Virus record (IMG/VR): IMGVR_UViG_3300024999_000030
Location: 124,001 to 188,000 of that record
Strand: one strand, 5' to 3'
DNA length: 64,000 bases
The notes under the pieces were generated by a model. That model was not told the DNA's origin and did no database searches. It saw only the letters and a program-made list of their open reading frames with translations. This document shows positions 3,822 to 45,088 of this stretch, one piece after another. Made by a program: the position numbers and the translations under genes. The number at the start of each line of letters is the position of its first letter. Positions within the stretch are counted from its first letter, which is position 1.

Positions 3822-3841
3822 AGCCACGTAGGTTGTCTAAG

Positions 3842-3875
3842 CCGCCCTCTCCTCCCCGGGGAGGGCGGTATTTTT
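3842..3875 (+). terminator. Intrinsic terminator
   Basis: ccgccctc...gagggcgg followed by attttt. Confidence 0.6.
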
Positions 3876-3889
3876 ATTATGGAGGATTC

Positions 3890-4435
3890 ATGAAACTTAA
3901 TTATGTACAATGCCGTCCCTATGACGGTTATTTTGATGTGGGTAAACCTAAAGGCGATGCGGCGGTAGACCTAAGAGCTTTAGAGGTTCAAGCCTTAGAT
4001 ATGCGAGGTTGTTTGCCAATTATAAGTAAAATGGGGGTCCAAACTGGTGATTGGGGGCAACTAGATACAGAATATATTTTTGGACATGAAGATTATGGGC
4101 ATGTGTGGGAGCTTCGCCCCCATACCATGCATAAAATTTATACTGGCGTAAGGATTCACTTGGGAGATGGATATGAAGGTAAAATTTGTTTACGTTCTTC
4201 TAGTGGACTGCTTGGGCTTGTGATGCCTAATGCCCCTGCTTTAATTGATAGTCACTATGTTGGGGAACTTATTGTCCCAATATTAAACCCAATGTCATAT
4301 AGTATTTATATTGCTCCTGGTTCAAGATTTGCTCAATTGAGTGCATTGACTTTTGAACCAACGGAACCTATATTGGTTATGGAACTAGCAGAAACAGAGC
4401 GAGGCAGTAAGGGCTTTGGTTCTACAGGCGCTTAG
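3890..4435 (+). CDS. dut: Trimeric dUTPase
   Basis: LRSSSG, LIDSHYVGEL, RFAQL and C-terminal RGSKGFGSTG motifs; RBS ggagg before ATG 3890. Confidence 0.9.
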   Translation: MKLNYVQCRPYDGYFDVGKPKGDAAVDLRALEVQALDMRGCLPIISKMGVQTGDWGQLDTEYIFGHEDYGHVWELRPHTMHKIYTGVRIHLGDGYEGKICLRSSSGLLGLVMPNAPALIDSHYVGELIVPILNPMSYSIYIAPGSRFAQLSALTFEPTEPILVMELAETERGSKGFGSTGA

Positions 4436-4451
4436 AAAGAGAAGGTGATGA

Positions 4452-5771
4452 GTGGCAACAATCAACGTGATTAAGCTAAAAAATAAGCCAGTAGTAATTC
4501 ATTATCGAGCATTTGAAAAATGTTTTAGGATGCAATATGTTTTACCTTACGCTGGAGCTGCTCATGAAAAAATTCCCGGGCTTGCCCATGCAACTGAACA
4601 TATGTTGGTTTTCAATAAACTAGGAAATCATAATATAGCCAATGAAGCCGCAGCTACATTTGGAGTCAACATCAATGCCTTCACCGGTTTTGCAATGGCT
4701 GGTTTAGACGCATCTGGTGTCGTTTCCACTAAAGCTTTAGACGAAGTGGCTAGACAATGGTCCGCTCAACTTGTTAGTGAAAATTATACACAAGAAAATT
4801 GGAATTGTGAAAAAGAAATTATTAGAGCCGAAGCTCTTGATGCTGATAACACTGCGGCTTTTATTGATGTTTTTATGAGGGCTGTTACCCGAACCTCTCC
4901 AAGATACAAACAAGGTGTTATGATTGGTACTGATTTTTTGGATGGTATTTCAGTAGCCGATCTTCGTAAGGCTCATCAAAATTGGAACACCTGGGGAGAC
5001 CAAAGTTTCGTTCTTATTGTTGGCGATTTGTGTCCAGAGGATATTAATCGCTTTATGACGAAAATGGATTTTGGTAATTATAATGCCTCCCTTAAAGTTA
5101 AATTAGATAAAAGCAGACCCAAAGCTTACGATCAAAAAATGTCTACATGGTCATTAGCTAATTATACCTTATCTGGTATAGAGGCAAGACGATATCACTT
5201 TATGGAGGCCTCTGGTCCTTTGCTTGGGACGCAAGCGTGGTACGATATGTTGGCCATCGGTGGTCTCTTTTTCACTGGTGGTAATTCCAAAGCTCATAAG
5301 GTACTACGTGGAGACCATGGTATTTGTTATGACTGTGGTGGTTTAATTTCTCGGGTAGATGGTGGGGTAGTATTGGGTATTGAATATGCCATGGAAAAAA
5401 AGCTTACCACTGGCCCCAAAGATCATGAGTTGTTATCGAAAATTGTAAAACAAGCCGCTTCGGATGTAACTCCAGAAGCAGTAAAAATGATAGCCATGAA
5501 TATGAAAACTAATTATTGTTTAATTCACAATAGTATTGAAGATTTAGTTGACGCGTTGGGAGATGAATTAACTATCATGTCCTATGAAACAACCCTAGCT
5601 GAATTTCAAAAAAATGCAAAACTTTTGACGCTTGATAATAGATTAGCAATGTTGGATAATCTTAATGTTGGTAGGTTACAACACCTTGCTAATAGATTTT
5701 CTAAGAGTAAATATACTGTGCATTATTTTACAGAAAAATGTGAGCACATTAAGAAGGGAAAAAAGAAATGA
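4452..5771 (+). CDS. M16 (inverzincin/pitrilysin-like) Zn peptidase
   Basis: GLAHATEHML (HxxEH) with downstream EKEIIRAE. Confidence 0.78.
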   Translation: MATINVIKLKNKPVVIHYRAFEKCFRMQYVLPYAGAAHEKIPGLAHATEHMLVFNKLGNHNIANEAAATFGVNINAFTGFAMAGLDASGVVSTKALDEVARQWSAQLVSENYTQENWNCEKEIIRAEALDADNTAAFIDVFMRAVTRTSPRYKQGVMIGTDFLDGISVADLRKAHQNWNTWGDQSFVLIVGDLCPEDINRFMTKMDFGNYNASLKVKLDKSRPKAYDQKMSTWSLANYTLSGIEARRYHFMEASGPLLGTQAWYDMLAIGGLFFTGGNSKAHKVLRGDHGICYDCGGLISRVDGGVVLGIEYAMEKKLTTGPKDHELLSKIVKQAASDVTPEAVKMIAMNMKTNYCLIHNSIEDLVDALGDELTIMSYETTLAEFQKNAKLLTLDNRLAMLDNLNVGRLQHLANRFSKSKYTVHYFTEKCEHIKKGKKK

Positions 5772-6412
5772 AAATTATAGGAATTTCTGGAAAGGCAAGA
5801 AGCGGTAAAGACACTACTGCTAATTTTTTGAGAGATAAATATGGTTTTTCAGTGATTCATTTTGCTGACATTCTTTATGCGGAAACACAGGAAATTTATA
5901 AATATTGCACATTAGTGGTTGGCGACAATGCCGAATATACTGGTGTTAAATTAGAAAATGGAATTGTCGTACCGTTACCCTCATCTTTCCCGCCCTCTCT
6001 TTTAAGAGATGGAATGAAGGAAAAAAATGGTAATTTTTTACAATGGTGGGGAACTATTCGACGTAATTATTTTAAAAAAGACTATTGGGTTGAACGTGTT
6101 GAAGATACTTTAGCTAATTTTGAAGCCAATGGAATAAAAAATGTTGTTGTAGCTGATGTGAGACTTCTGAATGAAGCTAATTTTATTAAGGGTGTCAGGG
6201 GAAAATTATTGAGAACGATAAGGTATAATGCAGACGGAAGTCCATTTATTGATCCCAATCGTGATCCTAAACATGAATCAGAAATTGAATTAGATGATTA
6301 TCCTGATTTTGATGCTATTCTAATTAACTTACATGATATTCAATTTCTCTGCGATAGTGCCGAGGAATTGTTATTTAAAATTTTTCCAGATATAACATGT
6401 AACTTATCCTAA
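5768..6412 (+). CDS. Deoxynucleoside monophosphate kinase
   Basis: MKIIGISGKARSGKDT P-loop; LQWWGT, YWV, VVVADVR..NE, HESE motifs. Confidence 0.85.
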   Translation: MKIIGISGKARSGKDTTANFLRDKYGFSVIHFADILYAETQEIYKYCTLVVGDNAEYTGVKLENGIVVPLPSSFPPSLLRDGMKEKNGNFLQWWGTIRRNYFKKDYWVERVEDTLANFEANGIKNVVVADVRLLNEANFIKGVRGKLLRTIRYNADGSPFIDPNRDPKHESEIELDDYPDFDAILINLHDIQFLCDSAEELLFKIFPDITCNLS

Positions 6413-6421
6413 GGAGAAAAT

Positions 6422-8083
6422 ATGAGTACGCCCAAGAAAGTATATCTTAAAGAAGAAGCTCAGCGACTTTTAAGTAAAGGGGTAAATACAATTACAGATG
6501 TGGTGGCCTGCACTTTAGGTGCTCAAGGCCGAGTTGTAACTATTGACCGTGGCCGTTATGGTACTACCGTTACAAAAGATGGGGTCACTGTCGCCAATGA
6601 AACTATTTTGGAAGATCCAGCTGAAAATATCGGCGCCGACATGATAAGAACCGCCGCTAATACAACAAATGACACCGCTGGAGACGGGACCACCACCGCA
6701 GCAGTCTTAACTAGAGAAATCTATAATGAGGGTCGAAGGGCCATGGCAGTAGGTGTAAACATTGCCGAATTAAGACGTGGCATTAACGCCAGTAAGGATG
6801 TTGCTGTTTCAGAATTAAAACGTTTAGCTACTTCCGTGAAAGATGGTGATATTCAAAAAATTGCCACTATTTCTGCTAACAATGACGATATCACTGGGGC
6901 TATTATTGCAGAAGCAATTAACAGGGTTAATAACGGTGTAGTAACGGTTGAGTTATCTCAGACAGCTGAGACTTATTATTCTTTAACAGAGGGCTTCCAA
7001 TTTGACAAAGGATTACCAACACCATATTTTGTAACTGATCAAATTAGAAATATTACTGAGTTTGAAGATGCATATATTCTCATTACTATGCATAAATTGA
7101 TGGCCGCTGAACCATTGGTCAATTTATTGAATGAAGTTAGTAAATCTAAAAAACCTCTTTTAATTATTGCCGATGGCTTTAGTAATGAAGTTCTTCAAAC
7201 GCTTGTCTATAATAAAATGAAGGGCGCCGTACAAGTTGCCGCTGTAAGCACCCCAGGCTATGGTGAGGCTAAAATTCAACTTTGTGAAGATATGGCAGCT
7301 TTAACTGGAGCACAATTTGTAGACCCAGAGGTAACTAATATTAATGATGTTTCTTTGGCATATTGTGGTCAAGCTAAAAAAATCATTTGTACTAAATTTA
7401 GCACCACGATTATGGGTGGGGGCGGAAACAAAGAAGTAGTGGATCAACGTATGGATAGAATTAAATATGCGTTGGCTCAAGAGCATTTGGCTCCCTTTGA
7501 AATTGATCAACTTAGAGATAGATTAAGTAGATTGCAGGGCGCCGTTGCGGTTATTCATGTTGGTGGTCTTAACGAAGAAGAAGCGAATGAAGCTAAAGAT
7601 AGAGTGGAAGATGCTGTTCATGCCACTCAATCTGCTATGGAAGAGGGTATCCTTCCAGGTGGTGGTCTTGCTTTCCTATATGCTTCCAAGGCAGTGGAAA
7701 CGGCAATGGAAAATCAAGCACATAAAGATGCTAAAATTGGATTTGATATTATTCGGAAGGCTTTAAAGGCCCCATCGCGTCAAATTGCAGCAAATGCTGG
7801 CTTAGACCCAGCGACAGAAGCGGTCACTAAAGCACTAGAGGCTTATCCCCAGCAATATGGTTATGGTTTTAATGCTGCTACGGAACAATATTCTAATTTA
7901 ATAGATGATGGGGTAATTGACCCAGCAAAAGTGAGTAGAGCAGCTCTAGAAAATGCCGTATCTGTTGCCCTGCTTATGCTTACCACGGACGCTCTCCTTG
8001 TAGAAACTGCATTTAGAGAAGACGATCCTAGAGTGGATAAAGTGGCTCGCCCAAGGGTTATGATGCAAAAACACAATCAATAA
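6422..8083 (+). CDS. groEL: Group I chaperonin GroEL (phage-encoded)
   Basis: TLGAQGR, TKDGVTVA, AGDGTTTA, GFQFDKG, EEGILPGGG, GVIDPAKV motifs; no GGM tail. Confidence 0.96.
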   Translation: MSTPKKVYLKEEAQRLLSKGVNTITDVVACTLGAQGRVVTIDRGRYGTTVTKDGVTVANETILEDPAENIGADMIRTAANTTNDTAGDGTTTAAVLTREIYNEGRRAMAVGVNIAELRRGINASKDVAVSELKRLATSVKDGDIQKIATISANNDDITGAIIAEAINRVNNGVVTVELSQTAETYYSLTEGFQFDKGLPTPYFVTDQIRNITEFEDAYILITMHKLMAAEPLVNLLNEVSKSKKPLLIIADGFSNEVLQTLVYNKMKGAVQVAAVSTPGYGEAKIQLCEDMAALTGAQFVDPEVTNINDVSLAYCGQAKKIICTKFSTTIMGGGGNKEVVDQRMDRIKYALAQEHLAPFEIDQLRDRLSRLQGAVAVIHVGGLNEEEANEAKDRVEDAVHATQSAMEEGILPGGGLAFLYASKAVETAMENQAHKDAKIGFDIIRKALKAPSRQIAANAGLDPATEAVTKALEAYPQQYGYGFNAATEQYSNLIDDGVIDPAKVSRAALENAVSVALLMLTTDALLVETAFREDDPRVDKVARPRVMMQKHNQ

Positions 8084-8143
8084 TTGGGCACACCTATTAA
8101 TAAAACAAATTTAAAGTAGCATTTTAAAAAGAGAGGTACGCCC

Positions 8144-9541
8144 TTGAGTGCACGTAAAAATAGCTATGCATCTTATGACGATTTTTTACTAGATATTGGT
8201 GAATATTTTATAAGTTTAAACGCTGCGTTGTTTATGGAAACAGTACCTCCAACTGAAACAGCTAAAGCCTCTAAGAGAATAAAAACTTTAACGGGTTTAG
8301 TTGTTACGGCAACTACAGTTTCTACCTCAGCTAAAAAATTAAGAGTAATTGCGGAAAGGGAATATATAAAAATTGCAACAAAAATGAAAAGATCTTCAAA
8401 TCTTCCCACCACACAACTGATGTGTGATTTTCAATTATCAGAATTAGAAATGCTTATTCTTTTATATTTGTCATGGCAGGAAGTTGGGACTGACAATATT
8501 TTTATGTATATTAAAAATATCAGTCCAGTCCTTAAATTCTTTTCTAATAATGAAAAAGATGTAGTGTCTCGTTTAAAACTATTTAGTAATGATGCTAAAA
8601 TGATTAATGGCGGATTGTTGCATATCCAACAAAGTGAAAGTGCGCCTCTTGGGGCTTCTGATTTAATGGTGTTGGAGCCACTTAGAGAAATGTTAGCGGG
8701 GATGACGGATTATGATTTAGCGGTATTGCAACAAAAAAAGAAATGCAAAGACACATGTCAAACCGCTGGAACCATTACTCTTATAGCAAAAGAAGCTACT
8801 ATGGAACAGCTTCATATGACGGAAGCATATTTAAAACACTATAAAAAGATTTTTGTGGATTGGGCACTTGGGGAATCCATTCCATATGGAAGTGGTATGG
8901 TTATTTTATTTCATGGCCCCCCTGGCACAGGGAAAACCCTCGCCGCCCGTTATTTAGCCCAACGTTGCAAAAAAGAATTAATTGTAGTGGATTATGCTGA
9001 TTTACTTAATAAATATGTTGGTGAAACAGAAAAGAAAATTAAAGAAATGTTCAAACGCGCTGCAAAATCTGGAGCCGTGCTCCTAATTGATGAAGCTGAT
9101 AGTGTGATGCACGCTAGAGGCGATGATTCAAAGAGTTGGGAAATTTCACAGGTCAACGTATTGCTTCAGTGTGTGGAAGCTCATGATGGTGTGGTGATTT
9201 TAACTACCAATCGTGAGGAATTATTAGATAAAGCGTTAATGCGTCGTGTTATTCTTAAAGTAGCATTTGAAATGCCAGATGCTAGTCAACGCGCCAAAAT
9301 ATGGCAAACGATGCTTAAAGAGCAAGCAATTGATAAGGCGGTTGATTTTAAAATTTTAGGTGAAGAATTTATATATGCCGGTGGTAATATTAAAAATGCT
9401 GTGTTATTGGCGGCTATTCTTGCTGCCAACAAAGGTAAAGAGAAGATTGGTATGGATGATTTACGTGAAGCCGCTATGTTAGAAAAGAAAAAAGTTACAC
9501 CGAAGGGTTCTAAAATTGGCTTCATGGGCGAATCAAAATGA
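8144..9541 (+). CDS. AAA+ ATPase with large N-terminal domain (SpoVK/Vps4/Afp15-like)
   Basis: Walker A FHGPPGTGKT, KYVGETEK, Walker B LLIDEAD, ILTTN, Arg finger ALMRR, GGNIKN. Confidence 0.88.
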   Translation: MSARKNSYASYDDFLLDIGEYFISLNAALFMETVPPTETAKASKRIKTLTGLVVTATTVSTSAKKLRVIAEREYIKIATKMKRSSNLPTTQLMCDFQLSELEMLILLYLSWQEVGTDNIFMYIKNISPVLKFFSNNEKDVVSRLKLFSNDAKMINGGLLHIQQSESAPLGASDLMVLEPLREMLAGMTDYDLAVLQQKKKCKDTCQTAGTITLIAKEATMEQLHMTEAYLKHYKKIFVDWALGESIPYGSGMVILFHGPPGTGKTLAARYLAQRCKKELIVVDYADLLNKYVGETEKKIKEMFKRAAKSGAVLLIDEADSVMHARGDDSKSWEISQVNVLLQCVEAHDGVVILTTNREELLDKALMRRVILKVAFEMPDASQRAKIWQTMLKEQAIDKAVDFKILGEEFIYAGGNIKNAVLLAAILAANKGKEKIGMDDLREAAMLEKKKVTPKGSKIGFMGESK

Positions 9542-10398: not shown

Positions 10399-13300
10399 GT
10401 GGGATATAATAGTAAGGATATTAAGGTCCTTAAGGGCCTGGATCCTGTTCGTCAACGCCCTGGTATGTATATTGGAAACACGGATGACGAGACAGGAACT
10501 CATCAAACTGCATTTGAAATTATAGACAACGCAATAGACGAGGCCATGAACGGCTATGCCGATTTGGTCGCTGTCACCGTTCATGCGGATGGAAGTCTTT
10601 CTGTGCGCGATAATGGTCGGGGCGTGCCTGTGCAGATGCATCCTACCGAGAAAAAATATGGTGTTGATCTTGTTTTTACAGTACTTCATGCTGGCGGAAA
10701 ATTTGACGAACAGGCATATAAAACATCTGGTGGTCTTCACGGCGTGGGAGCCTCAGTGGTCAACGCTCTTTCTGAATGGCTTAAAGTTGAAGTAAAAAGA
10801 GATGGCAGGAAATATTTTAGAGAATATGCTAATGGTAATCCTATTGGCGAACTTCAGGATCTCGGTCCAAGTAAGAAAACCGGCACTATCGTTACATTTA
10901 AACCGAGCGTTAAGGTGTTTAGAAAGCCGGAATTTAGCTTTGAAATATTAAAAAATAGATTAGAAGAATTAGGCTTTCTCAATGAAGGCGTTGCTATTAA
11001 ATTAACCGATGAGCGCACCAATGAGGAATTTGAAGTTGGTCATAATGACGGTTTGAAACGTTTTGTGGAGAGAATTGAACCGAAGGCTCAAATTCTCACT
11101 CCTCTTATCCAAGTGTCTAGCGCCAAAGGCGAAAAAGTACGAGTGCGTTGTGCATTGCAGTGGAAGTTAGATTTTGATGGAGATAGGCTTCTCGCTTTTA
11201 CTAATAATATTCGTAATGGTGACGGCGGTACTCATGTAGTTGGTTTTAAAAATGTTTTAACACGATGTCTCACTAAAGCCCTAACGGGCAAAAAGGGAGC
11301 TAGCCTCGTTACTGGGGATGATGTTCGTGAGGGCCTTGTTGCTATTATTGATGTTAAAATGAGTGACCCTAAGTTTTCGTCTCAGGTTAAGTCAAAACTC
11401 GTTTCCGAAGAAGCTCGTACGGCATTGGAGAATATGTCTGGGGCCTTTGAAGATTATTTTGAAAAAAATCCAGCTCATTTAAATCGCGTAATGCAAAATG
11501 CCGTGAGAGCTGCGGAATCTAGGGAGGCAGCTCGTAAAGCAAGAGATTTATCTCGAAAGAAAAACGCAATGGATATCGGAGTTCTTCCTGGTAAATTAGC
11601 GGATTGTCAAAGTAAAGATCCAGCCATTAATGAATTATTCTTAGTTGAAGGAGATTCAGCCGGTGGAACAAGTAGACAGGGTAGGGATAGAAAATTTCAA
11701 GCGATTCTTCCATTGCGTGGTAAGGTAATCAACGCAGAAAAAGCGACCCTACATAAACTATTGGCAAATGAAGAAATTAAATCACTCATTGCTGCAATTG
11801 GAACTGGTATTGGAGAAAATTTCGATATTGAGCGTTTAAGATATCATAAGATTTGTATTATGACTGACGCCGATAGTGTTACTGGAGACACCCCCTTAAT
11901 GGTTTTTAATAAGGAAACCAAAGAAATGAAACTATATCGCACAGACGATTTTATTGATAATGTTTGTACGGATATTTCTAAATATCAGATAGTGGCATGT
12001 GATTTGAAACACAAGTCTTTTGGTTTTAGAAACTTACAACAAGTGTATAAGCATCCAAGTAAAAAGCAATTATTTAGAATTACAGATGACAATGGACATC
12101 ATGTAGATGTAACATCAGATCATAGTGTTTTTGTGTATCGGAAAGAAACAAGGTCATTTGAAGCCGTATCTACAGTGCGTCTTTCTGTCGAGGACCAACT
12201 CGTTTCATCTAGAGCTATACCAGATATTACAACAACAGAAATGAAAATTAATCCATATTTGCTTGGTTTATTTATTGGTCATGGGCAAGTAGATAGTCAA
12301 GGTCATTTCAAATTACTGCGTAGTACGAGATTTAAACAACGGGCTGTGGATTTCAACAGCTTACCAGCAGTAAAAATTACCACTACAGATAGAGTAGCTC
12401 AAACAGAAACGTTGGAATTTACCAATAAACGTATTTCAACAATGATATCCAGTTTTAATATTACTAAATCTGAATTACCAAATTGTTTGTATACGGCACC
12501 AACGGCCCAAAAATTAGCTTTTCTGCGTGGTTTATTGGAGTCATGCGCAGCGGTGATGGTTCACCAGGGTATATCTATTTGTGCTGAAGATTCATTGGCT
12601 ACTGGGTTGATCTATCTACTGAGACAATTTGGAGTGTCTCCAGCTATTCTTAGAGGTGGGGCCAAGGCATTAATCAATATTAAAATTAAAGATATGGCAT
12701 TCATTGCTGGGGCCTGGGATCATCATAAAGCAGTTAAAGATTTTGGTGATCTTGTTGCTCCATCCAAAGAATATGAATTGGTAAAAATTAAATCAATTGT
12801 GGAGCTTCCTCAACAACCATATGTTTACGATTTGTCTGTGGATGTGGATCAGAATTTTGTGGCAGGAACGGGAGCAACTCTCTTACACAACACCGATGGG
12901 GCCCACATTAAAACGCTATTGTTGACTTTCTTTTATCGACATATGCCAGAGTTAGTGAAAAAGGGACATATTTATATCGCTCAGCCGCCACTATATCGTT
13001 GTGTTATTCGTGGTAAGGTGCATTACATTTTGAACGATGGGGAATTAAGATTGTTTAAGGTAAAAGAAAAATATGGATTACTTAGAACTTATAAAAAGGG
13101 TAAAAAATATGCTTTTCCACAAGAACAAATTTTTGATATGCCAAAGGGAACTCTTTTATATTCAGATAAACTACTATTTGATGTTCCCATAGAAGATATT
13201 ATGAAACTAGTTACAGAACCAAGAGAAGATCTTAAGCTTCAGCGGTTCAAAGGGTTGGGAGAGATGGCAGCAGAACAATTAGCTGAAACCACTCTAAACC

Positions 13301-13443
13301 CATCTAGCAGAAGAATGTTACAAATTAAAATAGAATCAACAGAAGCTGCAGATAACATGATTACAACTTTGATGGGTGATGACGCAGAGGCTCGTCGCAC
13401 CTTTATTATGGAAAATTGCCAATTCGCTACTCCAGACGTGTGA
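10399..13443 (+). CDS. gyrB: DNA gyrase subunit B interrupted by an intein
   Basis: RPGMYIG, EIIDNAIDE, GGLHGVG, VEGDSAGG, PLRGK, IMTDAD|intein|TDGAHI, QRFKGLGEM. Confidence 0.95.
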   Translation: MGYNSKDIKVLKGLDPVRQRPGMYIGNTDDETGTHQTAFEIIDNAIDEAMNGYADLVAVTVHADGSLSVRDNGRGVPVQMHPTEKKYGVDLVFTVLHAGGKFDEQAYKTSGGLHGVGASVVNALSEWLKVEVKRDGRKYFREYANGNPIGELQDLGPSKKTGTIVTFKPSVKVFRKPEFSFEILKNRLEELGFLNEGVAIKLTDERTNEEFEVGHNDGLKRFVERIEPKAQILTPLIQVSSAKGEKVRVRCALQWKLDFDGDRLLAFTNNIRNGDGGTHVVGFKNVLTRCLTKALTGKKGASLVTGDDVREGLVAIIDVKMSDPKFSSQVKSKLVSEEARTALENMSGAFEDYFEKNPAHLNRVMQNAVRAAESREAARKARDLSRKKNAMDIGVLPGKLADCQSKDPAINELFLVEGDSAGGTSRQGRDRKFQAILPLRGKVINAEKATLHKLLANEEIKSLIAAIGTGIGENFDIERLRYHKICIMTDADSVTGDTPLMVFNKETKEMKLYRTDDFIDNVCTDISKYQIVACDLKHKSFGFRNLQQVYKHPSKKQLFRITDDNGHHVDVTSDHSVFVYRKETRSFEAVSTVRLSVEDQLVSSRAIPDITTTEMKINPYLLGLFIGHGQVDSQGHFKLLRSTRFKQRAVDFNSLPAVKITTTDRVAQTETLEFTNKRISTMISSFNITKSELPNCLYTAPTAQKLAFLRGLLESCAAVMVHQGISICAEDSLATGLIYLLRQFGVSPAILRGGAKALINIKIKDMAFIAGAWDHHKAVKDFGDLVAPSKEYELVKIKSIVELPQQPYVYDLSVDVDQNFVAGTGATLLHNTDGAHIKTLLLTFFYRHMPELVKKGHIYIAQPPLYRCVIRGKVHYILNDGELRLFKVKEKYGLLRTYKKGKKYAFPQEQIFDMPKGTLLYSDKLLFDVPIEDIMKLVTEPREDLKLQRFKGLGEMAAEQLAETTLNPSSRRMLQIKIESTEAADNMITTLMGDDAEARRTFIMENCQFATPDV
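11875..12891 (+). mobile_element. 339-aa intein (Ser1...His-Asn, +1 Thr) with degenerate LAGLIDADG endonuclease
   Basis: Block A SVTGDTP; block B VTSDHSVF; block F VYDLSV; block G LLHN/T; HEN-like blocks YLLGLFIGHG and FLRGLLESCA. Confidence 0.92.
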
Positions 13444-13450: not shown

Positions 13451-14500
13451 ATGTCGACTATCAATAAAATTATAGGTAAAGGACTAACATTTGATGATGT
13501 CTTGTTAGTGCCCGGTTATTCTGAAATATCTTCCCGTAATGATATTACGGTTAAAGCTCAGCTCCATCCCAATCTCTGTTTAACTGTGCCGGTTATTTCA
13601 GCTAACATGGACACAGTAACGGGTGAGGAGATGTGCCGGATTATGCATAAACATGGGGGATTGGGAATTCTACATAGGTTTGCTCCAGAAGCAGAATTAA
13701 TTTCAATTGTGGAGACCCTACAAGAAGATAAGGTTAGATTTGGTGTTTCCGTAGGGGTAAACCTAGATGATGAAAAGCTTTTTAATTTATATTTATCTCG
13801 TGGTATAAATATTTTTTGTGTAGACGTAGCCCACGCTCATCATCAAAAGGTTAGATATCGTTTGAGACACATTAGAAATGCTAAAAAAGATGCTATTATT
13901 ATTGCTGGAAATGTAGCCACTCTCGATGGAGCTAATTTTCTTGCAGAAAATGGAGCCGATATCATTAAAGTCGGGATTGGCCCAGGTTCGCTGTGCTCAA
14001 CCCGCATTATGACGGGTTGCGGAGTTCCCCAGCTCACCGCTATTATTGATTGCGACGTTATTAAACAGAACCATCCTCATGTTAAAATTTTAGCTGATGG
14101 TGGAATTCGTTATCCAGGTGACATCACTAAGGCAATCGCGGCAGGGGCTGATGCGGTTATGATTGGTGGTATGTTAGCTGGCACAGAACAAACTCCAGGT
14201 TTAATCATTAAGAAGGGCACACCATCTAGGCCATTACTATATAAACGCTATCGCGGTTCTGCTTCCATGGAAGCTAAATCGTCTTCTGGTCGAGATATTA
14301 AATTTATAGAAGGGGTTTCAACAGATATTCCATATAGAGGGGACGCTTCCCTCGTTATTGATGAGATTATAGATGGATTAAAATCTGGGTGTTCTTATGT
14401 TGGAGCTAGTAGTTTATTGGAATTACAGGCTAAGGGCAGATTTGTAGAGGTTACACATGCAAGTTATGTTGAGGGAACTCCCCACGGTTCAGGCTATTAA
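13451..14500 (+). CDS. guaB: IMP dehydrogenase/GMP reductase family enzyme, no CBS domains
   Basis: [56 protein letters not shown] vs GMPR cannot be resolved by eye (flap YRGSAS). Confidence 0.8.
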
Positions 14501-21635: not shown

Positions 21636-22652
21636 ATGAGTTATTATGAAGCTTTAGGTGTTACTAAAGAGGCAACGGCGGAAGAAATTAAAAAGGCATA
21701 TAGGGAAGCCGCTCTTAAGTATCATCCCGATAGAAATCCTGGTAACCAAGAAGCTGAAGATAAGTTTAAAGTTGTTTCTGAAGCGTATTCTATTTTATCT
21801 GATGTTGAAAAACGCAGACAATATGATATGGGTGGCCAGAGCTATGATTTAAATGATCATGAAATGTGGGACGCTTTTTTTCCAGGTTTCCGCCCTAATT
21901 ATGGAGCGCCCGGCTCTCATAGAAGAAATTGGCCAGCAAGAGATGTGGAAACTGTTCTAAATATTACTTTAGAAGAGGCTTTTAGTGGAGTTGATAAAGA
22001 AATTTCATATCGAGCGGACATACCATGCTCGACTTGTAATGGGACCGGAGATTCCTCTGGGTCTAGAGCACAATGCTCTCATTGTCGAGGAACTGGAATG
22101 GAAAGCTCAAGACGAGGCAATTTTGTTGTACAGCGTGCCTGCCCCATATGTGGTGGAGATGGAAATTCTATCACTAATAAATGTGGTAAATGTAATGGGA
22201 GAGGCAGTATTAAAGAAGATAAAATTGTATCTGTAACTATTCCCGCCGGAATTCCAAATAGGGCTCAAATGAGAGTTCCAAACCACGGTGGAACTGGTGG
22301 CTTCCCAGGTCATGAAACTGTGACTGGAGATTTATATGTAAATATTATCATTCAACCACATCCAGAATTTATAAGGCAGGGAGAAGATATTAATTATCAA
22401 TTAAATATCTCTCCAGCTAAAGCTACTCTTGGTGGTACTGTAGATTTAAGTAATTTTATGTTTCATGGAACTGTGAAAATTCCGCCAGGAACCGCCAGTG
22501 GAACTAAATTTGCCGTTCGAGGAAAGGGAATGCCAAAATTTCAAAATAAAGGTCGGGGAGACTTTTATTATGAAGTAATAATTGTTCCCAAGACCCAGTT
22601 AACTGACAAGGAAACTGAACTATATCGACAGTTATTGGAGATGGAACAATGA
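21636..22652 (+). CDS. dnaJ: Type I DnaJ co-chaperone
   Basis: J domain with HPD; four CxxCxGxG repeats; C-terminal IPAG and GKGMP motifs. Confidence 0.95.
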
Positions 22653-32624: not shown

Positions 32625-33431
32625 AATATTAAATGAAATAATAGAACATCCTGAAATATTAGACAATAACAATTATAGATCAAGGGAATTCTGTGTACAT
32701 TCCTGTGATGGTTGTTGTTTAGTTATAAATTGGGAATTAGGTATAGTCGACTTAACTGAGGCTCAATTTTTATTAAGATGTATTGAAAAAAGAGCTGAGT
32801 TAGAAATTAGTCCTTCGGTTTCTCAATAGTAAAATTAATTTCAAAAAACTCAACGGGCACCGTTAATTGTATGTTAACGGTGACCGTTCTTTCTTTGTTA
32901 TATATATAATTTGCCCACGTTCGTGAGGTGGTCATTCTGAATTATTGCCCTCCCACGTAACGATTTCCCATGGCTCAATTTTATGTTGAAGTTTAATCTT
33001 TTTTAAGATCATTCGAACATCTTCTAGTGAGCGCCAGGTATCGTTTTCGAAATATGACACCCTTTCCCATTTTTCTTCTATTTTCCAGAAAAGAAATTTA
33101 TGAGCCGGAACAAATTTTTGAATTTGATATATGTAATCACCATTGTCATCGTTGTACTGTCGTTGTCTTTGAATTCTATAAATGAAATCTTCCATTGTTT
33201 TATTCCTCTATAATAATATTGTCGATGTTATTAAGTGGAAAGATAAATTGAGATTTATCTTTATATACAATAAAACATCCGTTCAAGTAAGCATATGGTA
33301 CGGCGCTTTTAACTACGGTAATAACCGTATCTTCGTGATCTGAAAACATATATTGATGAGCCGCTCCGATATTCGTGTGAACAACAATTCTCTTTACCAT
33401 TTTATTTCTCCTTTTTATTTCATCCTTAATC

Positions 33432-33460
33432 AATATAATTATAAATCATGAAATAGTCAA
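33432..33460 (-). promoter_or_regulatory. Promoter TTGACT-N17-TATATT
   Basis: Exact spacing. Confidence 0.65.
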
Positions 33461-36400
33461 TGTATTTATTTAGATTCATTAAACGCTTCCATCACACCTT
33501 TCCACCAAGTATTTGGGCTGTTCCATTCCCACCACATATTTTGTCTCATCCAAAAACTCCAAATCTGGCGCACACTGAATGATGTCTTATTGGGCATGTG
33601 AGAGGGTTTCATTGTTTAAAACCCATCAAATAATGTTTGTAGGGAGATGGGATCTGAAGTTTCAAATGAAGCACATTCTTCTGCGGAATAGCGTGGGCTC
33701 ATCCATCCAATAACTTTAAAAAATTTAGTAGTGATTCCGTCTGTAATAAGAACTTTAATTGTCGCTCCCCTATTTCCAACCGGACGATCACCGATCCCTA
33801 AGTCATAATAACTACCTGCTTTCTCGGCTGCGGATTCAAAACTATCCGCTTCAAAGTCAATATAAAATGAAGAATTATCTGAATTAACAATTATAGCTTT
33901 AATTTTCAAATTTCCTCCTATCTACTTGGTGTTGGTGATTTTGCTTCCCGTCTCATTTTATAGAGATGCCAATTAATATAGATGGAGGCATCTCTATCTC
34001 TATGGTGAGACAAATCCAATTGATCACTAAGCCACTCAACAACAGAGGTCTTATTTTTACTCATTTTTCTTCTGTTTTTATGTCTTTTAATTTTTTAAAT
34101 AAGTCATGTGTTTTAGCCGCAGCTATTTTAAACGAGCAACCTAATTCTTGATTCTTTAATATGGAATTTACAAGAGCTTCTCTAAATTTCTTGTCACGCT
34201 CATATGCAATCCATTTCCACCAAGTTTTATTTATCGTTCGTTTAATAATCGTTGCCATCTTGTGCCTTCTTCAAGACTTCCATCACTTCATTTGCGTACC
34301 TCTTAGCAGCGTCTAAGTCCTCTTGAGTCCATATTTTTTGCTTTTTACGACAAGCAATGTCACGTTTTCTATCTAACTCTTCGGTGCTTTGTTTATCAAT
34401 TAATTTAGAGTGTAATTCTGTATTTTCGCTCATATTTTCTCCGTAAGTGAACATTTCCATATAGTATTTAAATCATATGGCTCTTCATCGGTTTGAAATT
34501 TAGCACCACACTCACAAACGATAGTGCAATTTATCTCTTTTGATAATTCGTAATAAATATTAGTTGCCGCTTGTTTAATATTACAAATTGGACAATCTAT
34601 ATGATTATGCACTACTTCTTTACAATCACAACAACAAAGCTCACGTGTAATTGTTAATCTTCCGCTCCAAGAGTATTTCCATGTGTCTTGGGTGCTAGTC
34701 ATCGCTCTTTTTACATGACCTGGTAATTAAATCATATTTCATATTTATTATATCTGAAATACTAATTGTAATATGAGATGTTATGGTAAATACAGGCATC
34801 TTTACATATTTATTGGAAAACTTATACCATGTATTTTTAATAGTGGGGGGCTTTATTTCTTTAGCAGTAGGCATTTTCATTGTTACCAGAGCCCCTTAAG
34901 TCGCATTGCCGCTTCCATAGATTTTTTCAAATCTATATAATACAACCACCTTTTCCATGTTTGTGCAATTCTCATAAACTTATCCTTCGTAATAATATAA
35001 GATTTATCACTATAATAGTCAAGGTGAGATGAAATAATGCCGAATGGAACGTTCATATTCAAACTGTTTTCGTAATTGCCACGTAGCGCTAATTGTAAGT
35101 ACAATATATTCTGTTTTTAATTTTCCATCAGTGGTTATTTCACAAACAGTATATGGCCAACCAACTCTACTAATCCATTCTGTAAATTCTTTATCGATCA
35201 TAACGTTGAAATTCTTCTCCTGTAAAAGTTTTGACTATTACATATATAAACCAGGTGTCTTTAATATTACGACTTAATATTTTTTTCATTATATTATTGT
35301 TTTAATTTAATTTTATAAATACATATTACTTATTTTAATACAATATTGTCCAGTTTTCTTTCTAATGTGATCTGCTTTATATTTCCACCAAACACTAGCT
35401 ATGCTTGGATTTTTATCTTTAAATATTTTTGCTATAATTTTCATTATTTGTCTCATTAGGGTTTTTTCCCAACGCCGCGTCTTTTCGTTGCCATGGCACG
35501 GGCTCGACCATGATTTCGCCATACAATACTATCAGTGGGAATATCATGAAATATACAATATTTATACCAATTACAATCGATGTTATGGCGTGTTCTTTTT
35601 TTATCTTGAAACGATTGATATAAGCTTCCACAAATGCGTAAAAAGAGGCAACTGCTATAGCTAAACATAAGAGGTCCATTTATTTATTCCTCTTTAGTTT
35701 CCAAAGATGATGAATTGGTGTAGTTGGATCCATGCGAATATCATTATACTGTTTCCAATATCTCCAATTAAATTTAGTATTTATATATAAAGTAACACCC
35801 TTAATAGTACTTGCGGGCATTTGAATTTTAATCCAAGAAGAGAAGGACATCATGACACTATCTCCTTAGTCAACTTTCGATAATAAAGCCAAAGGCACCA
35901 CGTCCTTTTGGCGTATCTGAATGAATATATATGAGAAGGTGATCCTTTGGCCATCCGCCAAGATGTCTATCTCCCCCAGCTACTTCAAGCGCAGAAATCC
36001 ATTGGGAAAAAGATATCATTCTTCTCTCTTTTTTTAAAATCTTTTTCTATTTGCCATAAAATCCAATTATCATAAATATTAATAATTAGATCTGTGTCTA
36101 AATTTACTGATTCTATTTGTCGACGAATCCAGTCAGAATATTTTTGTCTTAATTTTACATCAACCACGATGGCCCACTCTCCCTTAGGATTTTTTACTTA
36201 TCCACCGCCAAAGCCAAGTGTTAAAGATACAAATATTTAAATTTTGGTGTGGCCAATTTAACTTTTGATTAATTAATTTAACATATTTAAGATCTAATTC
36301 TTTTTCGTTCATTTGTCGTCTTTATGGCTTCGTTTATGGCTTCGTGGCTTGTATAATAATTTCGAAGTCTCCAGGTTGACTCTGGTGTGTCGTCATGCGC

Positions 36401-37770
36401 ATAATCAAAACGTCCACCAGAATCAACCGACATTATCCATTTTTTCCATTCCTTAAATGTCATCTTTTTACTTCCACCCATTTATCACTTGGACTGGGGT
36501 GTTCGGTTAACTCTCTCTTAATCCACGACTCAGCCGCCCACAATCCCCCAAAATATATAGTCTTGTCTTCGGCTCCAGTTACATCTACCCAATCGTAGCT
36601 GGCGTATGGCGATGGAGTGAGATTTAATCGTGGGGTCCATTTCCATTCTTGAATCTTATATCTTTCTCCATTTGTAACAATCCTGAATCTAGTACCAATT
36701 GGCCTAACATATGGATGTTCTGGAATTTCTGGAATATTTATTTCTGATGGAATTGATTGATTAGCTTGAAATCTTCCTTGAGTAATATTGGAATTAGAGT
36801 GCCCCTTAATGGTATATGTGGTCTTACCCAAGTCAGTTTTTCCAAAACAATAAATAATCGTTATAACTAAACCTATAAAAAACATAATCATTGCAATATT
36901 AGTAGCTTGAGCTTTATTCATATTATTTATCTTTCTTTTGTGTGGAACAAATAACGGTTGCCCCATATATGGTGGCTATGTGTCCAGATTGAATCATTTC
37001 TCTTTTTATTGCAGCAATTTTATTACGAGTTTCCCACTGTTTCCATGTGTTGAAAATATTAGGTTTCGTCTTTTTATATTTAAGGGAGTGCCAATCTTTC
37101 CAGTCTTTCATGCTACCACTCTATATATTTTAAATTCTTGATTAATGTCCATCACACTACATATAATTGTTCCAATATTATATTTTCCATTTGCGTTACT
37201 CAGCGCCCGCTTTCGGGTGGCCACATGATAAATCATCCAAGCATAAAGAATTGAATTATAACGAATGTTAATAAACTTATTCATATTACCACCCTATAAA
37301 TTATGCATTTATTATTATTGCGAATTGTTAACATTGAACCTGGAAATAAATCATATTTATTTGAACAGCTAAGCCAAGTGTGTATAACAGAACCGAATGA
37401 TATAAATTTTGTCATTTTATTCGGTTTCTCTTAATTTTTCAAGTCTTTTGGCGTGTTCAATCATCCAAGGTTCAATATCAATCTTACGAGTGAAGGCTGC
37501 GGCATATAAAGCTCCGAGACTGTCTTTAGGTGCTCCCTCTTTAACACATATTTCAATTATTTTAATTAGCAAGTCAGTTTGCCTTGCGGTTAAACTTTCA
37601 GATAATTCGCTTACAACTTCTACGTCAGTCATTTTATTTCCTTATATCATTAGATTAAATTATTTCTCTTTTTATTGTGGCTATTTTAATGGAAATTTTC
37701 CATTAAAATAAAACCTAATAAACCAATAATGTTTCCAGGTACTCTTAATTGTTGGGGCCCACGTTTTACA

Positions 37771-37833
37771 ATTAGTATCTAAAATTTTAATATCCGAATT
37801 ATAATTGATATCTAAAATTTTAATATCCGAATT
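37771..37833. repeat. 33-bp-period tandem duplication (tatctaaaattttaatatccgaatt x2) encoding NSDIKILD x2
   Basis: Seen directly in the sequence and in ORF 37681-37863. Confidence 0.85.
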
Positions 37834-37859
37834 AAACGCCGTACCTAAATCAATAATCG

Positions 37860-38369
37860 TCAAAATTCTTTTCCATCACAATAACGATGAATGTTAATCA
37901 ATTCTATATCAACTGAGCGGACAAGAACATCGGCTTCTTCAAGCATAATTACAGATCGTTCATGCGAGGCTTTCCAATTTTCCCATTTACCGAGTTCTTT
38001 CATGTGTTTTTCCCAGCCTGAATCAATAATAATCTCTTTGATACCAACCTGAATAATAGCCCTGGCACAATCAGCGCAGGGAAAAGCACTAATATAGATT
38101 CGGCATCCTTTTAAAGATACACCCTCACGAGCCGCAGAATAAATGGCATTGCGTTCGGCGTGTTCCATCCAAAAGTATTTTTCTCCATTTTCACGAGATT
38201 GTCTTTCAGAAACATCATCTTTAATACCACGAGGAAATGAATTATATCCGGTGGCCTTTACTATATTATCTCTATTTACAACTATTGCACCGATATGGGT
38301 GTTTTGATCTTTACTTCTCGTGGAAAGTAAGTGTACAAAATTTAGAAAGTAATTATCCCAGTCATTCAT
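37860..38369 (-). CDS. dCMP deaminase
   Basis: WDNYF, RSKD, GYN, HAERNA, PCADC. Confidence 0.92.
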   Translation of the reverse strand: MNDWDNYFLNFVHLLSTRSKDQNTHIGAIVVNRDNIVKATGYNSFPRGIKDDVSERQSRENGEKYFWMEHAERNAIYSAAREGVSLKGCRIYISAFPCADCARAIIQVGIKEIIIDSGWEKHMKELGKWENWKASHERSVIMLEEADVLVRSVDIELINIHRYCDGKEF

Positions 38370-38388
38370 TTAATAACCTCTCAGTTTA

Positions 38389-38417
38389 AATATAATCCCT
38401 GGCTATCAGAATGTCAA
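38389..38417 (-). promoter_or_regulatory. Promoter TTGACA-N17-TATATT
   Basis: Exact spacing; upstream of the dCMP deaminase. Confidence 0.7.
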
Positions 38418-39558: not shown

Positions 39559-39587
39559 AATATAACTTATAAATAATAATTTGTCAA
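39559..39587 (-). promoter_or_regulatory. Promoter TTGACA-N17-TATATT
   Basis: Exact spacing. Confidence 0.7.
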
Positions 39588-42466: not shown

Positions 42467-42495
42467 AATATAAGATATAATCAATCAAAAATCAA
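42467..42495 (-). promoter_or_regulatory. Promoter TTGATT-N17-TATATT
   Basis: Exact spacing; upstream of ORF 41982-42338. Confidence 0.6.
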
Positions 42496-44374: not shown

Positions 44375-44389
44375 TATGGCCTCACTATC

Positions 44390-44418
44390 AATATAATTTG
44401 AACGTTGTTAATTGTCAA
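44390..44418 (-). promoter_or_regulatory. Promoter TTGACA-N17-TATATT
   Basis: Exact spacing; heads the long leftward transcription unit. Confidence 0.72.
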
Positions 44419-44574
44419 GTAAGAGTCGATGATAATTAAATAAGGATAATAATGGGGCCGCCGTTAAGAGGATACTGTATAGGATTGATATGGGTATTGT
44501 ATGGATATTGGGTATTTAAACAGGAGGTTATAAAGAGATCGGTGTAATAATGTAAAGGCTTATGAATACTGAAT

Positions 44575-44890: not shown

Positions 44891-45088
44891 AAGTTGTGAA
44901 AATACTACCCCCCAGACAATAAGAGTCTGAGGTAATATCAGTATCTCCCCGCCCTAAGTCTAAGCCAAGCATCAAGCGACTTACACTTGTAAAGAGTTTG
45001 GCCAGTATCAAAGTATAGCGTGACGCTGTGTCATGCTAGATACTGGCGCGAGTGTAAGAGACTTAGATACTGGCCAAAGGAGTTAAAG

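What the first reader, a model, noticed from the sequence alone, without database searches (positions are those of the whole stretch)
11875..12891. Intein splitting the TOPRIM DxD motif of a phage GyrB, with a decayed endonuclease
Seen: MTDAD|SVTGDTP...LLHN|TDGAHI, 339 aa, Ser1, with +1 Thr where the usual motif DADVDG has Val. The EGDSAGG site used by the Synechocystis GyrB intein is uninterrupted here. The LAGLIDADG catalytic Asp positions read IGHG and LLESCA. Inference: homing is dead but splicing is essential, so gyrase activity could be gated by splicing conditions.
Basis: partly seen in the sequence, partly recalled or inferred. Interest (0 to 1): 0.6.

Follow-up and report, generated by a model that had tools for sequence, protein, structure and literature searches.

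The report
Nuclease-dead intein in jumbo-phage GyrB
A groundwater jumbo phage carries a gyrase B gene interrupted, in its metal-binding catalytic motif, by a self-splicing intein whose homing nuclease has lost both catalytic residues but keeps its fold; this is a clear but ordinary late stage of the known intein life cycle.

Summary
Window 11875-12891 encodes a 339-aa class-1 intein (Ser1, TxxH, block-F Asp, His-Asn, Thr+1). It sits between the residues that match E. coli GyrB D500 and V501, inside the Toprim DxDxD motif of a 1014-aa GyrB ORF (10399-13443). The record is a 332.7-kb tailed-phage genome.

The site is not unusual. At least 113 GyrB clusters, mostly Patescibacteria, DPANN archaea and Chloroflexi, carry an intein at this junction. 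Most are about 525 aa, with an HTH accessory region and intact LAGLIDADG motifs.

The phage version lacks about 137 aa of accessory region. It has His and Cys where 103 and 104 of 113 relatives have the catalytic Asp. An AlphaFold model (pLDDT 93.9) still superposes almost fully on nuclease-bearing inteins (PI-PkoII Z 32.2; TliVMA; PhoVMA).

All eight GyrBs of this syntenic phage lineage carry a short, Asp-less intein. No intein-free close relative was found. The nuclease-like domain is under purifying selection (dN/dS 0.12), like the exteins.

"Homing dead, splicing required" is well supported by inference. "Gyrase gated by splicing conditions" has no evidence.

Side finding: the phage has no GyrA gene.

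The parts
10399..13443 (+). gyrB ORF, a 1014-aa precursor with a GTG start and an AAGGAAG Shine-Dalgarno-like site 7 nt upstream. It has GHKL ATPase, transducer, Toprim (interrupted) and GyrB C-terminal domains.
   Evidence: NF011501 (DNA gyrase subunit B) scores 856 bits against a cut-off of 796. The GTG start is shared by four relatives.
10399..11874 (+). N-extein (492 aa), ending ...IMTDAD. The last Asp matches E. coli GyrB D500.
11647..11667 (+). EGDSAGG Toprim motif (E. coli 424-430), uninterrupted. In other GyrBs a different intein allele is inserted directly after it.
11875..12891 (+). Intein, 339 aa, class 1 with Ser1 ... His338-Asn339.
11875..12213 (+). N-terminal half of the HINT splicing domain (intein residues 1-113). 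It includes block A (SVTGDTP) and block B (TSDH at 12112-12123; T80 and H83).
   Evidence: S1 and H83 are invariant in 113/113. Position 80 is T in 109 and S in 4.
12214..12753 (+). LAGLIDADG-fold nuclease-like domain (intein residues 114-293), with the complete two-fold alpha-beta core but no accessory HTH region.
   Evidence: Model secondary structure. Nearly the whole chain superposes on PI-PkoII, TliVMA and PhoVMA, and the central domain also matches I-DmoI. About 137 aa are missing relative to the roughly 525-aa relatives. There is no PF14528 hit even at E<=1.
12253..12285 (+). LAGLIDADG helix 1 motif PYLLGLFIGHG. His136 (12280-12282) sits where the family has the catalytic Asp.
   Evidence: The family profile aligns this position to the active-site acid of PI-PkoII.
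12517..12549 (+). LAGLIDADG helix 2 motif AFLRGLLESCA. Cys224 (12544-12546) replaces the catalytic Asp, and Ala225 replaces Gly.
12754..12891 (+). C-terminal half of the HINT domain (residues 294-339). It includes block F (VYDLSV at 12823-12840; D319) and block G (LLHN).
   Evidence: Y318, D319, H338 and N339 are invariant in 113/113.
12892..13440 (+). C-extein (183 aa), beginning TDGAHI. Thr+1 stands in place of E. coli V501, followed by the D502 equivalent.

Best explanation
This is a splicing-competent but homing-incompetent intein. It belongs to a widespread GyrB allele inserted between the second Asp and the following residue of the Toprim DxDxD motif.

The ancestral form is about 525 aa: a HINT splicing domain, an HTH accessory DNA-recognition region and an intact LAGLIDADG nuclease. 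In a lineage of groundwater jumbo phages it became fixed. The accessory region and both catalytic Asp were then lost.

The element now persists by vertical descent, for two reasons. First, a 339-aa insert in the metal-binding site has to splice out for the phage GyrB to work. Second, only an exact deletion could remove it without harm.

The nuclease-like domain is kept as a folded scaffold under purifying selection. The most likely reason is that the HINT domain has come to depend on it for folding or splicing, the HINT-HEN 'mutualism' described for other inteins.

Splicing would proceed in four steps: an N-O acyl shift at Ser1, transesterification by Thr+1, Asn339 cyclisation and an O-N shift. 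The mature protein would read DAD-TDG at the junction.

Shown: the anatomy, homology, fold, substitutions, selection and distribution. Inferred: that it splices, that the nuclease is inactive, and why the scaffold is retained.
For: - Intein identity and intact splice residues.
- Exact host-site restoration.
- Same-site allele in at least 113 protein clusters, all with Ser1 and a Thr/Ser+1. Most carry PF14528, and some carry HTH or Hom_end hits.
- The family profile matches PI-PkoII, VMA inteins, PI-PfuI and PI-SceI. Its extra region matches MBF1/XRE-type HTH proteins.
- D136H and D224C are specific to the phage clade. About 137 aa of accessory region are missing.
- Confident model with whole-chain matches to nuclease-bearing inteins, including PhoVMA, whose nuclease is experimentally inactive; PMC8966425.
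- All eight GyrBs with 54% or more N-extein identity carry a short Asp-less intein. They lie in syntenic phage loci (dUTPase-Cpn60-AAA-RNaseT-GyrB, followed by IMPDH where the contig extends that far).
- The nearest intein-free GyrBs are bacterial, at 55% identity or less.
- dN/dS for the one unsaturated pair (L006-L007): nuclease-like domain 0.12, exteins 0.09-0.12, Toprim core 0.03. Other pairs have saturated dS, yet the nuclease-like domain keeps 55-71% amino-acid identity and no stops.
- Intein GC and GC3 match the genome.
- In four groundwater runs from two studies, every contig of this phage carries the intein.
Against: - No experiment shows splicing or lack of cleavage.
- His and Cys are themselves metal ligands and are conserved in all four close relatives. 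That conservation is not statistically meaningful: 44% of the domain's columns are invariant, so p is about 0.2 for two sites.
- The net charge of the nuclease core (+6) lies within the range of intact relatives (median +7). Residual DNA binding cannot be excluded.
- The two phage clades' inteins are only 18-30% identical in the HINT-N and nuclease-like parts. That is less than clade 1 shares with Patescibacteria-type long inteins (37-41% in HINT-N). Their deletions also differ in part.
- The tree joins the two clades only weakly (support 69), with a long-branch warning. One ancient acquisition versus two parallel invasions and decays is unresolved.
- The mutualism explanation for scaffold retention comes from other inteins (PMC8966425) and was not tested here.
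Confidence: 0.72

Rival explanations
1. Conditional protein splicing. The intein acts as a switch, so that active phage GyrB forms only under certain conditions such as metal, redox state, temperature or stage of infection.
For: - The intein sits in an essential catalytic motif. It is flanked at -3, -1 and +2 by the Mg-binding Asp residues.
- It has been kept for a long time under purifying selection.
- The literature held in the library includes conditional splicing of other inteins, for example Mtb RecA (PMC11377839, listed).
Against: - No sensor feature was found.
- Ser1/Thr+1 excludes disulfide traps on a catalytic Cys.
- Persistence is fully explained by the need for exact deletion plus scaffold dependence.
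- The same site carries ordinary mobile inteins in over 100 cellular lineages. The location therefore reflects target conservation, not regulation.
Confidence: 0.1
2. The nuclease-like domain has been put to a new use. It might be a DNA-binding or metal-binding module, for example a His136/Cys224/Glu222 site where the two LAGLIDADG helices meet, rather than a passive scaffold.
For: - Purifying selection on the domain (dN/dS 0.12).
- H136, E222 and C224 are invariant in the four close relatives.
- The fold and net positive charge are retained.
Against: - Conservation of these residues is not above the background for the domain.
- The second phage clade has Ala/Ala at the same two positions. No common new site exists across the lineage.
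- The HTH DNA-recognition region is deleted.
Confidence: 0.1
3. The intein is still mobile. It would either cleave with a non-canonical active site or be mobilised by a nuclease acting in trans (collaborative homing).
For: - The same phage has an RNR intein with intact LAGLIDADG motifs.
- A relative (P0034) has picked up a second GyrB intein at the EGDSAGG site. Intein traffic in these phages is therefore ongoing.
Against: - Both catalytic acids and the accessory DNA-recognition region are lost.
- No free-standing homing endonuclease gene flanks gyrB.
- No intein-free target alleles were found in close relatives or in the source samples.
- The intein sits on a very long branch, consistent with long isolation.
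Confidence: 0.05
4. The insert never splices. The precursor is the functional product, for example a GyrB that binds host GyrA but cannot support DNA cleavage.
For: - The phage encodes no GyrA. Its GyrB must act through the host subunit.
- A Toprim-disrupted subunit would be a plausible poison.
Against: - Every splice-chemistry residue is intact and invariant.
- The Toprim residues on both sides of the intein are the most conserved part of the gene (dN/dS 0.03). That is not expected if the motif were never assembled.
Confidence: 0.03

Closest known systems
PhoVMA intein (Pyrococcus horikoshii V-ATPase; PDB 7qst) compared with TliVMA (7qss/7qsu)
   Same: A HINT domain with a nested LAGLIDADG domain that keeps its architecture but lacks the catalytic Asp in both LAGLIDADG helices. 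It is read as a late stage of the homing cycle (PMC8966425). Structural match: Z 27.3 over 293 residues to PhoVMA, Z 32.0 over 316 residues to TliVMA.
   Different: The host protein is different (V-ATPase, archaeal) and it uses Cys1 chemistry. PhoVMA has a truncated helix 2 and still splices when its nuclease domain is deleted. Here both helices are full length with His/Cys substitutions, and dependence on the scaffold is untested.
Long (about 525-aa) GyrB inteins at the same DAD|T/S-DG site in Patescibacteria, DPANN archaea and Chloroflexi (e.g. P0007, P0013)
   Same: Same insertion point, with Ser1, TxxH, block-F Asp, HN and Thr/Ser+1. They share 25-41% identity and are homologous over the whole length.
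   Different: They keep the HTH accessory region and both catalytic Asp, and they hit PF14528. The phage form lacks about 180 aa in total and both Asp, and it sits on a long branch.
Synechocystis-type GyrB intein (the single gyrB allele listed by Soucy et al. 2014, PMC4071816)
   Same: An intein in the Toprim domain of GyrB.
   Different: A different site (directly after EGDSAGG, with Cys1 and Ser+1, as seen in relatives) and a different lineage. That site is empty in the window. Equating it with the Synechocystis intein rests on my memory of that intein's first residues.
GyrA inteins of Staphylococcus jumbo phages (DC4, PALS2, MarsHill, Madawaska)
   Same: Jumbo-phage gyrase genes interrupted by a LAGLIDADG intein that appears to be inherited from a common ancestor (PMC10638138).
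   Different: They are in GyrA, not GyrB. The endonuclease domain is detectable with PF14528. Those phages encode both gyrase subunits.
PI-PkoII / PI-TkoII (PDB 2cw7), PI-PfuI (1dq3), PI-SceI (1vde)
   Same: Best structural and profile matches, with the same two-domain intein architecture.
   Different: These are active nucleases with acidic catalytic residues and extra DNA-recognition domains.

Membership tests
Intein (HINT domain, class 1) | In-frame insert in a conserved host protein, whose removal restores the host motif | tested here: met
   E. coli GyrB residues 5-500 and 500-557 align on either side of the insert. Intein-free relatives read DADVDG.
Intein (HINT domain, class 1) | Block A nucleophile at residue 1 (Cys/Ser) and block B TxxH | tested here: met
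   Ser1, Thr80 and His83 are present. S1 and H83 are invariant in 113/113 homologues.
Intein (HINT domain, class 1) | Block F Asp, C-terminal His-Asn, and a +1 Cys/Ser/Thr | tested here: met
   D319, H338, N339 and Thr+1 are present, and all are invariant or T/S in the family.
Intein (HINT domain, class 1) | HINT fold | tested here: met
   Model pLDDT 93.9. Mini-inteins match at Z 17-22 with rmsd 1.3-2.2 A. Pfam PF14890 scores above its cut-off.
Intein (HINT domain, class 1) | Autocatalytic protein splicing | not testable with these tools
   Inferred only, from intact residues and strong purifying selection on the flanking Toprim residues.
LAGLIDADG homing endonuclease | Two LAGLIDADG helices packed in a pseudo-two-fold alpha-beta core | tested here: met
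   Model helices 127-136 and 210-224 with the beta-strands that follow them. The whole chain matches PI-PkoII and TliVMA, and the central domain matches I-DmoI and I-Tsp061I.
LAGLIDADG homing endonuclease | An acidic residue (Asp/Glu) at the end of each LAGLIDADG motif to bind the catalytic metals | tested here: not met
   His136 and Cys224 stand where 103 and 104 of 113 same-site homologues have Asp. The profile aligns these positions to the PI-PkoII active-site acids.
LAGLIDADG homing endonuclease | Match to the family's sequence profile (PF14528) | tested here: not met
   No hit at E<=0.1 on the protein or at E<=1 on the genome. The RNR intein of the same phage scores 64-67 bits.
LAGLIDADG homing endonuclease | Site-specific DNA cleavage | not testable with these tools
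   Needs a cleavage assay on an intein-less gyrB target.
DNA gyrase subunit B | GHKL ATPase, transducer, Toprim and C-terminal domains with the catalytic motifs | tested here: met
   PF02518, PF00204, PF01751 and PF00986 are all above their cut-offs. NF011501 scores 856 bits against a cut-off of 796. EGDSAGG, the QxK loop and DxDxD are present. TIGR01059 scores 787, below its cut-off of 882, as expected for an interrupted sequence.
DNA gyrase subunit B | A cognate GyrA partner encoded with it | tested here: not met
   No PF00521 or TIGR01063 match, and no tblastn match to E. coli GyrA below E=1, in the 332.7-kb record, which CheckV rates complete.
Conditionally splicing (regulatory) intein | An identifiable sensor, such as a redox-active Cys pair involving Cys1/Cys+1 or a metal site that controls the splice centre | tested here: inconclusive
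   Ser1/Thr+1 excludes traps on a catalytic Cys. Cys31 is conserved in 91/113 for unknown reasons. No other feature was found. Biochemistry is needed.

The most novel reading that the evidence does not exclude
The nuclease-dead LAGLIDADG domain is not a passive scaffold. In this reading it has become a sensor or DNA-binding module, for example a His136/Glu222/Cys224 metal site at the former active centre. It would control when the intein splices. An orphan phage GyrB that must pair with host GyrA would then mature only at a particular stage or condition of infection.
Probability: 0.06. Interest if true: 0.7.

Novelty: new member of a known kind. Interest (0 to 1): 0.3.

Why it matters
The locus is a clean natural example of the late stage of the homing cycle. 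The intein is fixed in a whole lineage of jumbo phages. Its catalytic residues and DNA-recognition region are gone, yet the nuclease fold is held by purifying selection as strong as that on the host protein. This supports the idea that HINT and nuclease domains become mutually dependent. It offers a compact 339-aa, cysteine-free (Ser1/Thr+1) intein to test that idea.

The work also documents that the GyrB DxDxD junction is a major intein site in uncultured bacteria and archaea. I could not find this allele described in the searchable literature.

Finally, it shows a phage that carries GyrB without GyrA, which raises the question of how a phage subunit takes over the host enzyme. None of this changes current understanding of inteins.

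Tried and rejected
- Megablast of the gene against cultured phage genomes found nothing.
- tblastn of the intein found only terminase inteins of Vibrio phages, at 25% identity. No cultured relative exists in that collection.
- IMG/VR scans found no closer viral GyrB than 51% identity, apart from a fragment of the same phage. None of the 68 loci where the site could be read carries an intein there. Twelve loci could not be read with my simple pattern.
- Reads: contigs that appear to skip the intein (joints 11826>12895 and 11875>12964) have short flanks of 33-38 bases. The table rows for contigs that end in this region are under 90% alike. I read them as other organisms' intein-free gyrB aligned on the conserved Toprim blocks, not as an intein-less phage allele.
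- Net charge of the nuclease core, used as a proxy for lost DNA binding, does not discriminate.
- Conservation of His136 and Cys224 as evidence for a new site is not above background.
- One origin versus two for the short phage inteins could not be resolved. The joining branch has support 69 with a long-branch warning, and the indel patterns differ in part.
- An alternative genetic code for the ORF-poor stretch 33.0-44.5 kb gave no long frames under any stop reassignment. The stretch is an array of small minus-strand genes.
- Literature searches for a name or description of this GyrB site found nothing specific.
- The spliced (joined) GyrB was not built, searched or folded.
- No complex prediction was run, and none of the claims rests on one.
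Full report
**1. What is in the sequence**

Window 10399-13443 (+) is one open frame of 1014 codons. Pfam finds HATPase_c, DNA_gyraseB, Toprim (cut short at residue 492), Intein_splicing (residues 527-831) and DNA_gyraseB_C. NCBIfam places the protein in DNA gyrase subunit B (NF011501, 856 bits, cut-off 796). It also finds the intein N- and C-terminal splicing regions above their cut-offs.

Translating exactly 11875-12891 gives 339 residues that start SVTGDTP and end LLHN. MTDAD precedes them and TDGAHI follows.

For numbering I fetched E. coli gyrB. There, EGDSAGG is residues 424-430 and DADVDG is 498-503. tblastn of E. coli GyrB on the phage genome aligns residues 5-500 up to the insert and 500-557 directly after it. 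The insert therefore lies between the equivalents of D500 and V501, inside the Toprim DxDxD motif, and Thr replaces Val as the first C-extein residue. Of the 114 nearest intein-free GyrBs, 113 read DADVDG and one reads DADIDG.

**2. It is a phage**

The window is bases 124001-188000 of a 332,730-bp IMG/VR virus record that CheckV rates complete. The record encodes a large terminase (phrog_675, E 5.7e-60) and a portal protein (phrog_16240, E 7e-45).

Genes around gyrB are typical jumbo-phage cargo: dUTPase, a dNMP-kinase-like protein, Cpn60, an AAA ATPase, an RNase T-like exonuclease, an IMPDH/GMP-reductase-family protein and DnaJ.

The DNA occurs in groundwater metagenomes from two studies.

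**3. The insertion site is common**

I searched the big protein collection with the intein part of the query while letting candidate length follow the whole protein. This returned 175 GyrBs with E<=0.001, of which the best 120 were listed and examined. In 113 of these the junction is the same: (T/C/A/S)DAD|S(V/L/I)...HN|(T/S)DG. All have Ser1 and a Thr or Ser at +1.

Where a source names them, they are Patescibacteria, Woesearchaeota/Nanoarchaeia or Dehalococcoidia.

Most of these inteins are 505-535 aa and carry precomputed PF14528 (LAGLIDADG_3). Some also carry PF05204 or PF12844 (an HTH family).

A profile of the family matches PI-PkoII (E 1e-36), TFIIB and VMA inteins, PI-PfuI and PI-SceI. 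Its extra region matches MBF1/XRE-type HTH proteins.

Two other GyrB intein sites appear in the same set. One lies directly after EGDSAGG (Cys1, Ser+1). The other is in the ATPase domain.

Older surveys list a single gyrB allele (PMC4071816) and 33 bacterial GyrB inteins (PMC4760082). I found no paper that describes the DxDxD-site allele. It is nevertheless plainly abundant in public data.

**4. The nuclease domain is structurally whole and chemically disarmed**

In the 113-sequence alignment, intein position 136 is Asp in 103 sequences and His only in the window's clade of four. Position 224 is Asp in 104 and Cys only in those four. Position 225 is Gly in 109 and Ala here. The HMM alignment to PI-PkoII puts these columns on that enzyme's active-site acids.

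Relative to the long relatives, the window's intein lacks about 137 residues between the N-terminal HINT half and LAGLIDADG helix 1. That is the HTH accessory region. It also lacks about 45 further residues in small deletions.

PF14528 does not detect the domain even at E<=1. The RNR intein of the same phage scores 64-67 bits.

The fold is still complete. An AlphaFold model built on the family alignment has pLDDT 93.9 and pTM 0.92. Its best structural matches are:

| Structure | VIA Z | rmsd (A) | Residues aligned (of 339) |
|---|---|---|---|
| PI-PkoII (2cw7) | 32.2 | 2.8 | 314 |
| TliVMA (7qsu) | 32.0 | 3.3 | 316 |
| PhoVMA (7qst) | 27.3 | 3.0 | 293 |
| PI-PfuI (1dq3) | 26.8 | 3.9 | 325 |

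Foldseek also matches the central domain to the free-standing LAGLIDADG enzymes I-DmoI and I-Tsp061I.

PhoVMA is the published precedent. It lacks the catalytic Asp in both helices, keeps the architecture, does not cleave, and regains cleavage when the active-site residues are grafted back (PMC8966425).

**5. Splicing machinery and host gene are under selection**

Ser1, His83, Tyr318, Asp319, His338 and Asn339 are invariant in all 113 homologues. Thr80 is Thr in 109 and Ser in 4.

I recovered DNA for three close relatives (L005, L006, L007) and computed Nei-Gojobori rates per segment. Synonymous sites are saturated for every pair except L006-L007, which has dS 0.5-0.7. For that pair:

| Segment | dN/dS |
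|---|---|
| N-extein | 0.086 |
| C-extein | 0.120 |
| Toprim core next to the intein | 0.032 |
| HINT halves | 0.10 |
| Nuclease-like domain | 0.122 |

Across the saturated pairs the nuclease-like domain still keeps 55-71% amino-acid identity. No stop or frameshift occurs in any homologue. The domain evolves two to five times faster than the N-extein at the protein level, but it is far from neutral.

The intein's GC and GC3 equal those of the genome.

**6. Distribution in the phage lineage**

Searching with the N-extein alone shows the nearest GyrBs to be P0003, P0005 and P0004 (85-93% identity) and then P0035 and P0038 (60%). Everything below that is bacterial, at 55% identity or less, and intein-free. 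P0041 and P0034 are at 54-56%.

The contigs of P0003, P0004, P0005, P0038 and P0034 are syntenic with the window. They share the order dUTPase-Cpn60-AAA-small ORF-RNase T-GyrB, followed by IMPDH where the contig extends that far.

All eight proteins carry a 339-345-aa intein at this site without catalytic Asp. Clade 1 has His/Cys and clade 2 has Ala/Ala.

In the source samples every contig of this phage contains the intein. The few joints that skip it have short flanks, and the contigs tabulated in that region are under 90% alike. I read them as other organisms' gyrB.

The intein tree puts each phage clade on a very long stem (1.9 and 2.1 changes per site). It joins them only weakly (support 69) and warns of long-branch attraction. 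The two clades share just 18-30% identity in the HINT-N and nuclease-like parts, and their deletions differ in part.

I therefore cannot say whether the intein entered once before the clades split or twice. Within each clade it has clearly been inherited vertically through saturating synonymous divergence.

**7. Interpretation**

The most economical reading is the standard homing cycle: invasion, fixation and loss of nuclease function. Two things then stall the cycle. Only an exact deletion could remove an insert from the DxDxD motif. The purifying selection on the dead domain suggests that the splicing domain now needs it as a scaffold, the mutualism proposed for TliVMA and MvuTFIIB (PMC8966425).

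The role of the Toprim acidic residues in metal-dependent DNA cleavage is established knowledge for E. coli GyrB E424, D498, D500 and D502 (my knowledge, not tested here). Hence splicing should be obligatory for activity.

The conserved His136, Glu222 and Cys224 tempt one to propose a new metal site. However, 44% of the domain's columns are invariant in these four sequences, and the sister clade has Ala/Ala. I rate that reading as unlikely.

**8. Side findings**

- The phage has no GyrA. There are no PF00521 or TIGR01063 matches, and no tblastn match to E. coli GyrA below E=1. The phage subunit would have to work with host GyrA.
- The class II RNR gene just upstream of the window carries a 367-aa Cys1/Cys+1 intein with intact LAGLIDADG motifs.
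- The portal gene may hold a third, weakly detected intein.
- One relative (P0034) has two inteins in GyrB.

**9. Limits**

Everything about activity is inferred. That covers splicing, absence of cleavage and dependence on the scaffold. The exteins were handled separately by reference.

Noticed in passing
whole record G000 (332,730 bp); gyrB at window 10399-13443: Orphan GyrB. The phage genome has no GyrA/ParC/gp52-type gene: no PF00521 match, no TIGR01063 match, and no tblastn match to E. coli GyrA below E=1. The phage subunit would have to pair with host GyrA.
   Followed up: partly
G000:C1:122617-123717 (just upstream of the window); the ORF ends at window 647: A second intein (367 aa, Cys1/Cys+1) sits in a B12-dependent class II ribonucleotide reductase gene. 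Its LAGLIDADG motifs are intact (PF14528, 64 bits), in contrast to the disarmed GyrB intein in the same genome.
   Followed up: partly
G000:C1:326925-329378 (L094 1-2454): The portal protein ORF (phrog_16240, E 7e-45 over its first 264 residues) continues into a stretch with weak Intein_splicing (E 0.003) and weak LAGLIDADG_3 matches. This may be a third, degenerate intein.
   Followed up: partly
window 3833-9541, 13451-14500 and 21636-22652: Unusual cargo, conserved in order across related phage contigs: dUTPase, a dNMP-kinase-like protein, a full-length Cpn60/GroEL chaperonin, an AAA ATPase, an RNase T-like exonuclease, an IMPDH/GMP-reductase-family enzyme and a complete DnaJ.
   Followed up: partly
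window 33000-44400: An 11-kb stretch of low GC (0.31-0.35) has almost no ORF of 100 aa or more. It is packed with minus-strand ORFs of 45-170 aa. No stop-codon reassignment opens long frames, so it looks like an array of small genes rather than recoding.
   Followed up: partly
window 44000-64000; tRNAs at 55810-55885, 55887-55961 and 56388-56473: GC jumps from about 0.31 to 0.43-0.53 at about 44 kb and stays high. The high-GC module holds tRNA-Met(CAT), tRNA-Lys(TTT) and tRNA-Leu(TAA).
   Followed up: no
protein P0034 (related phage contig, 22.8 kb, no DNA available): This relative's GyrB (1453 aa) carries two inteins: the short Asp-less one at the DAD|TDG site and a second one directly after EGDSAGG (Cys1, Ser+1). 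Phage gyrB is still being invaded at other sites.
   Followed up: no
window 11965-11967 (intein residue Cys31): Cys31 of the intein is conserved in 91 of 113 same-site inteins, although the splice chemistry uses Ser1 and Thr+1. Its role is unknown.
   Followed up: no
L060 and L061 (IMG/VR contigs): Some distant viral type IIA topoisomerase B subunits read DADTDG with no intein. Others have Gln, Pro, Tyr, Asp or Ala between the two Asp. The position that is Thr+1 here therefore tolerates many residues in viral enzymes.
   Followed up: no
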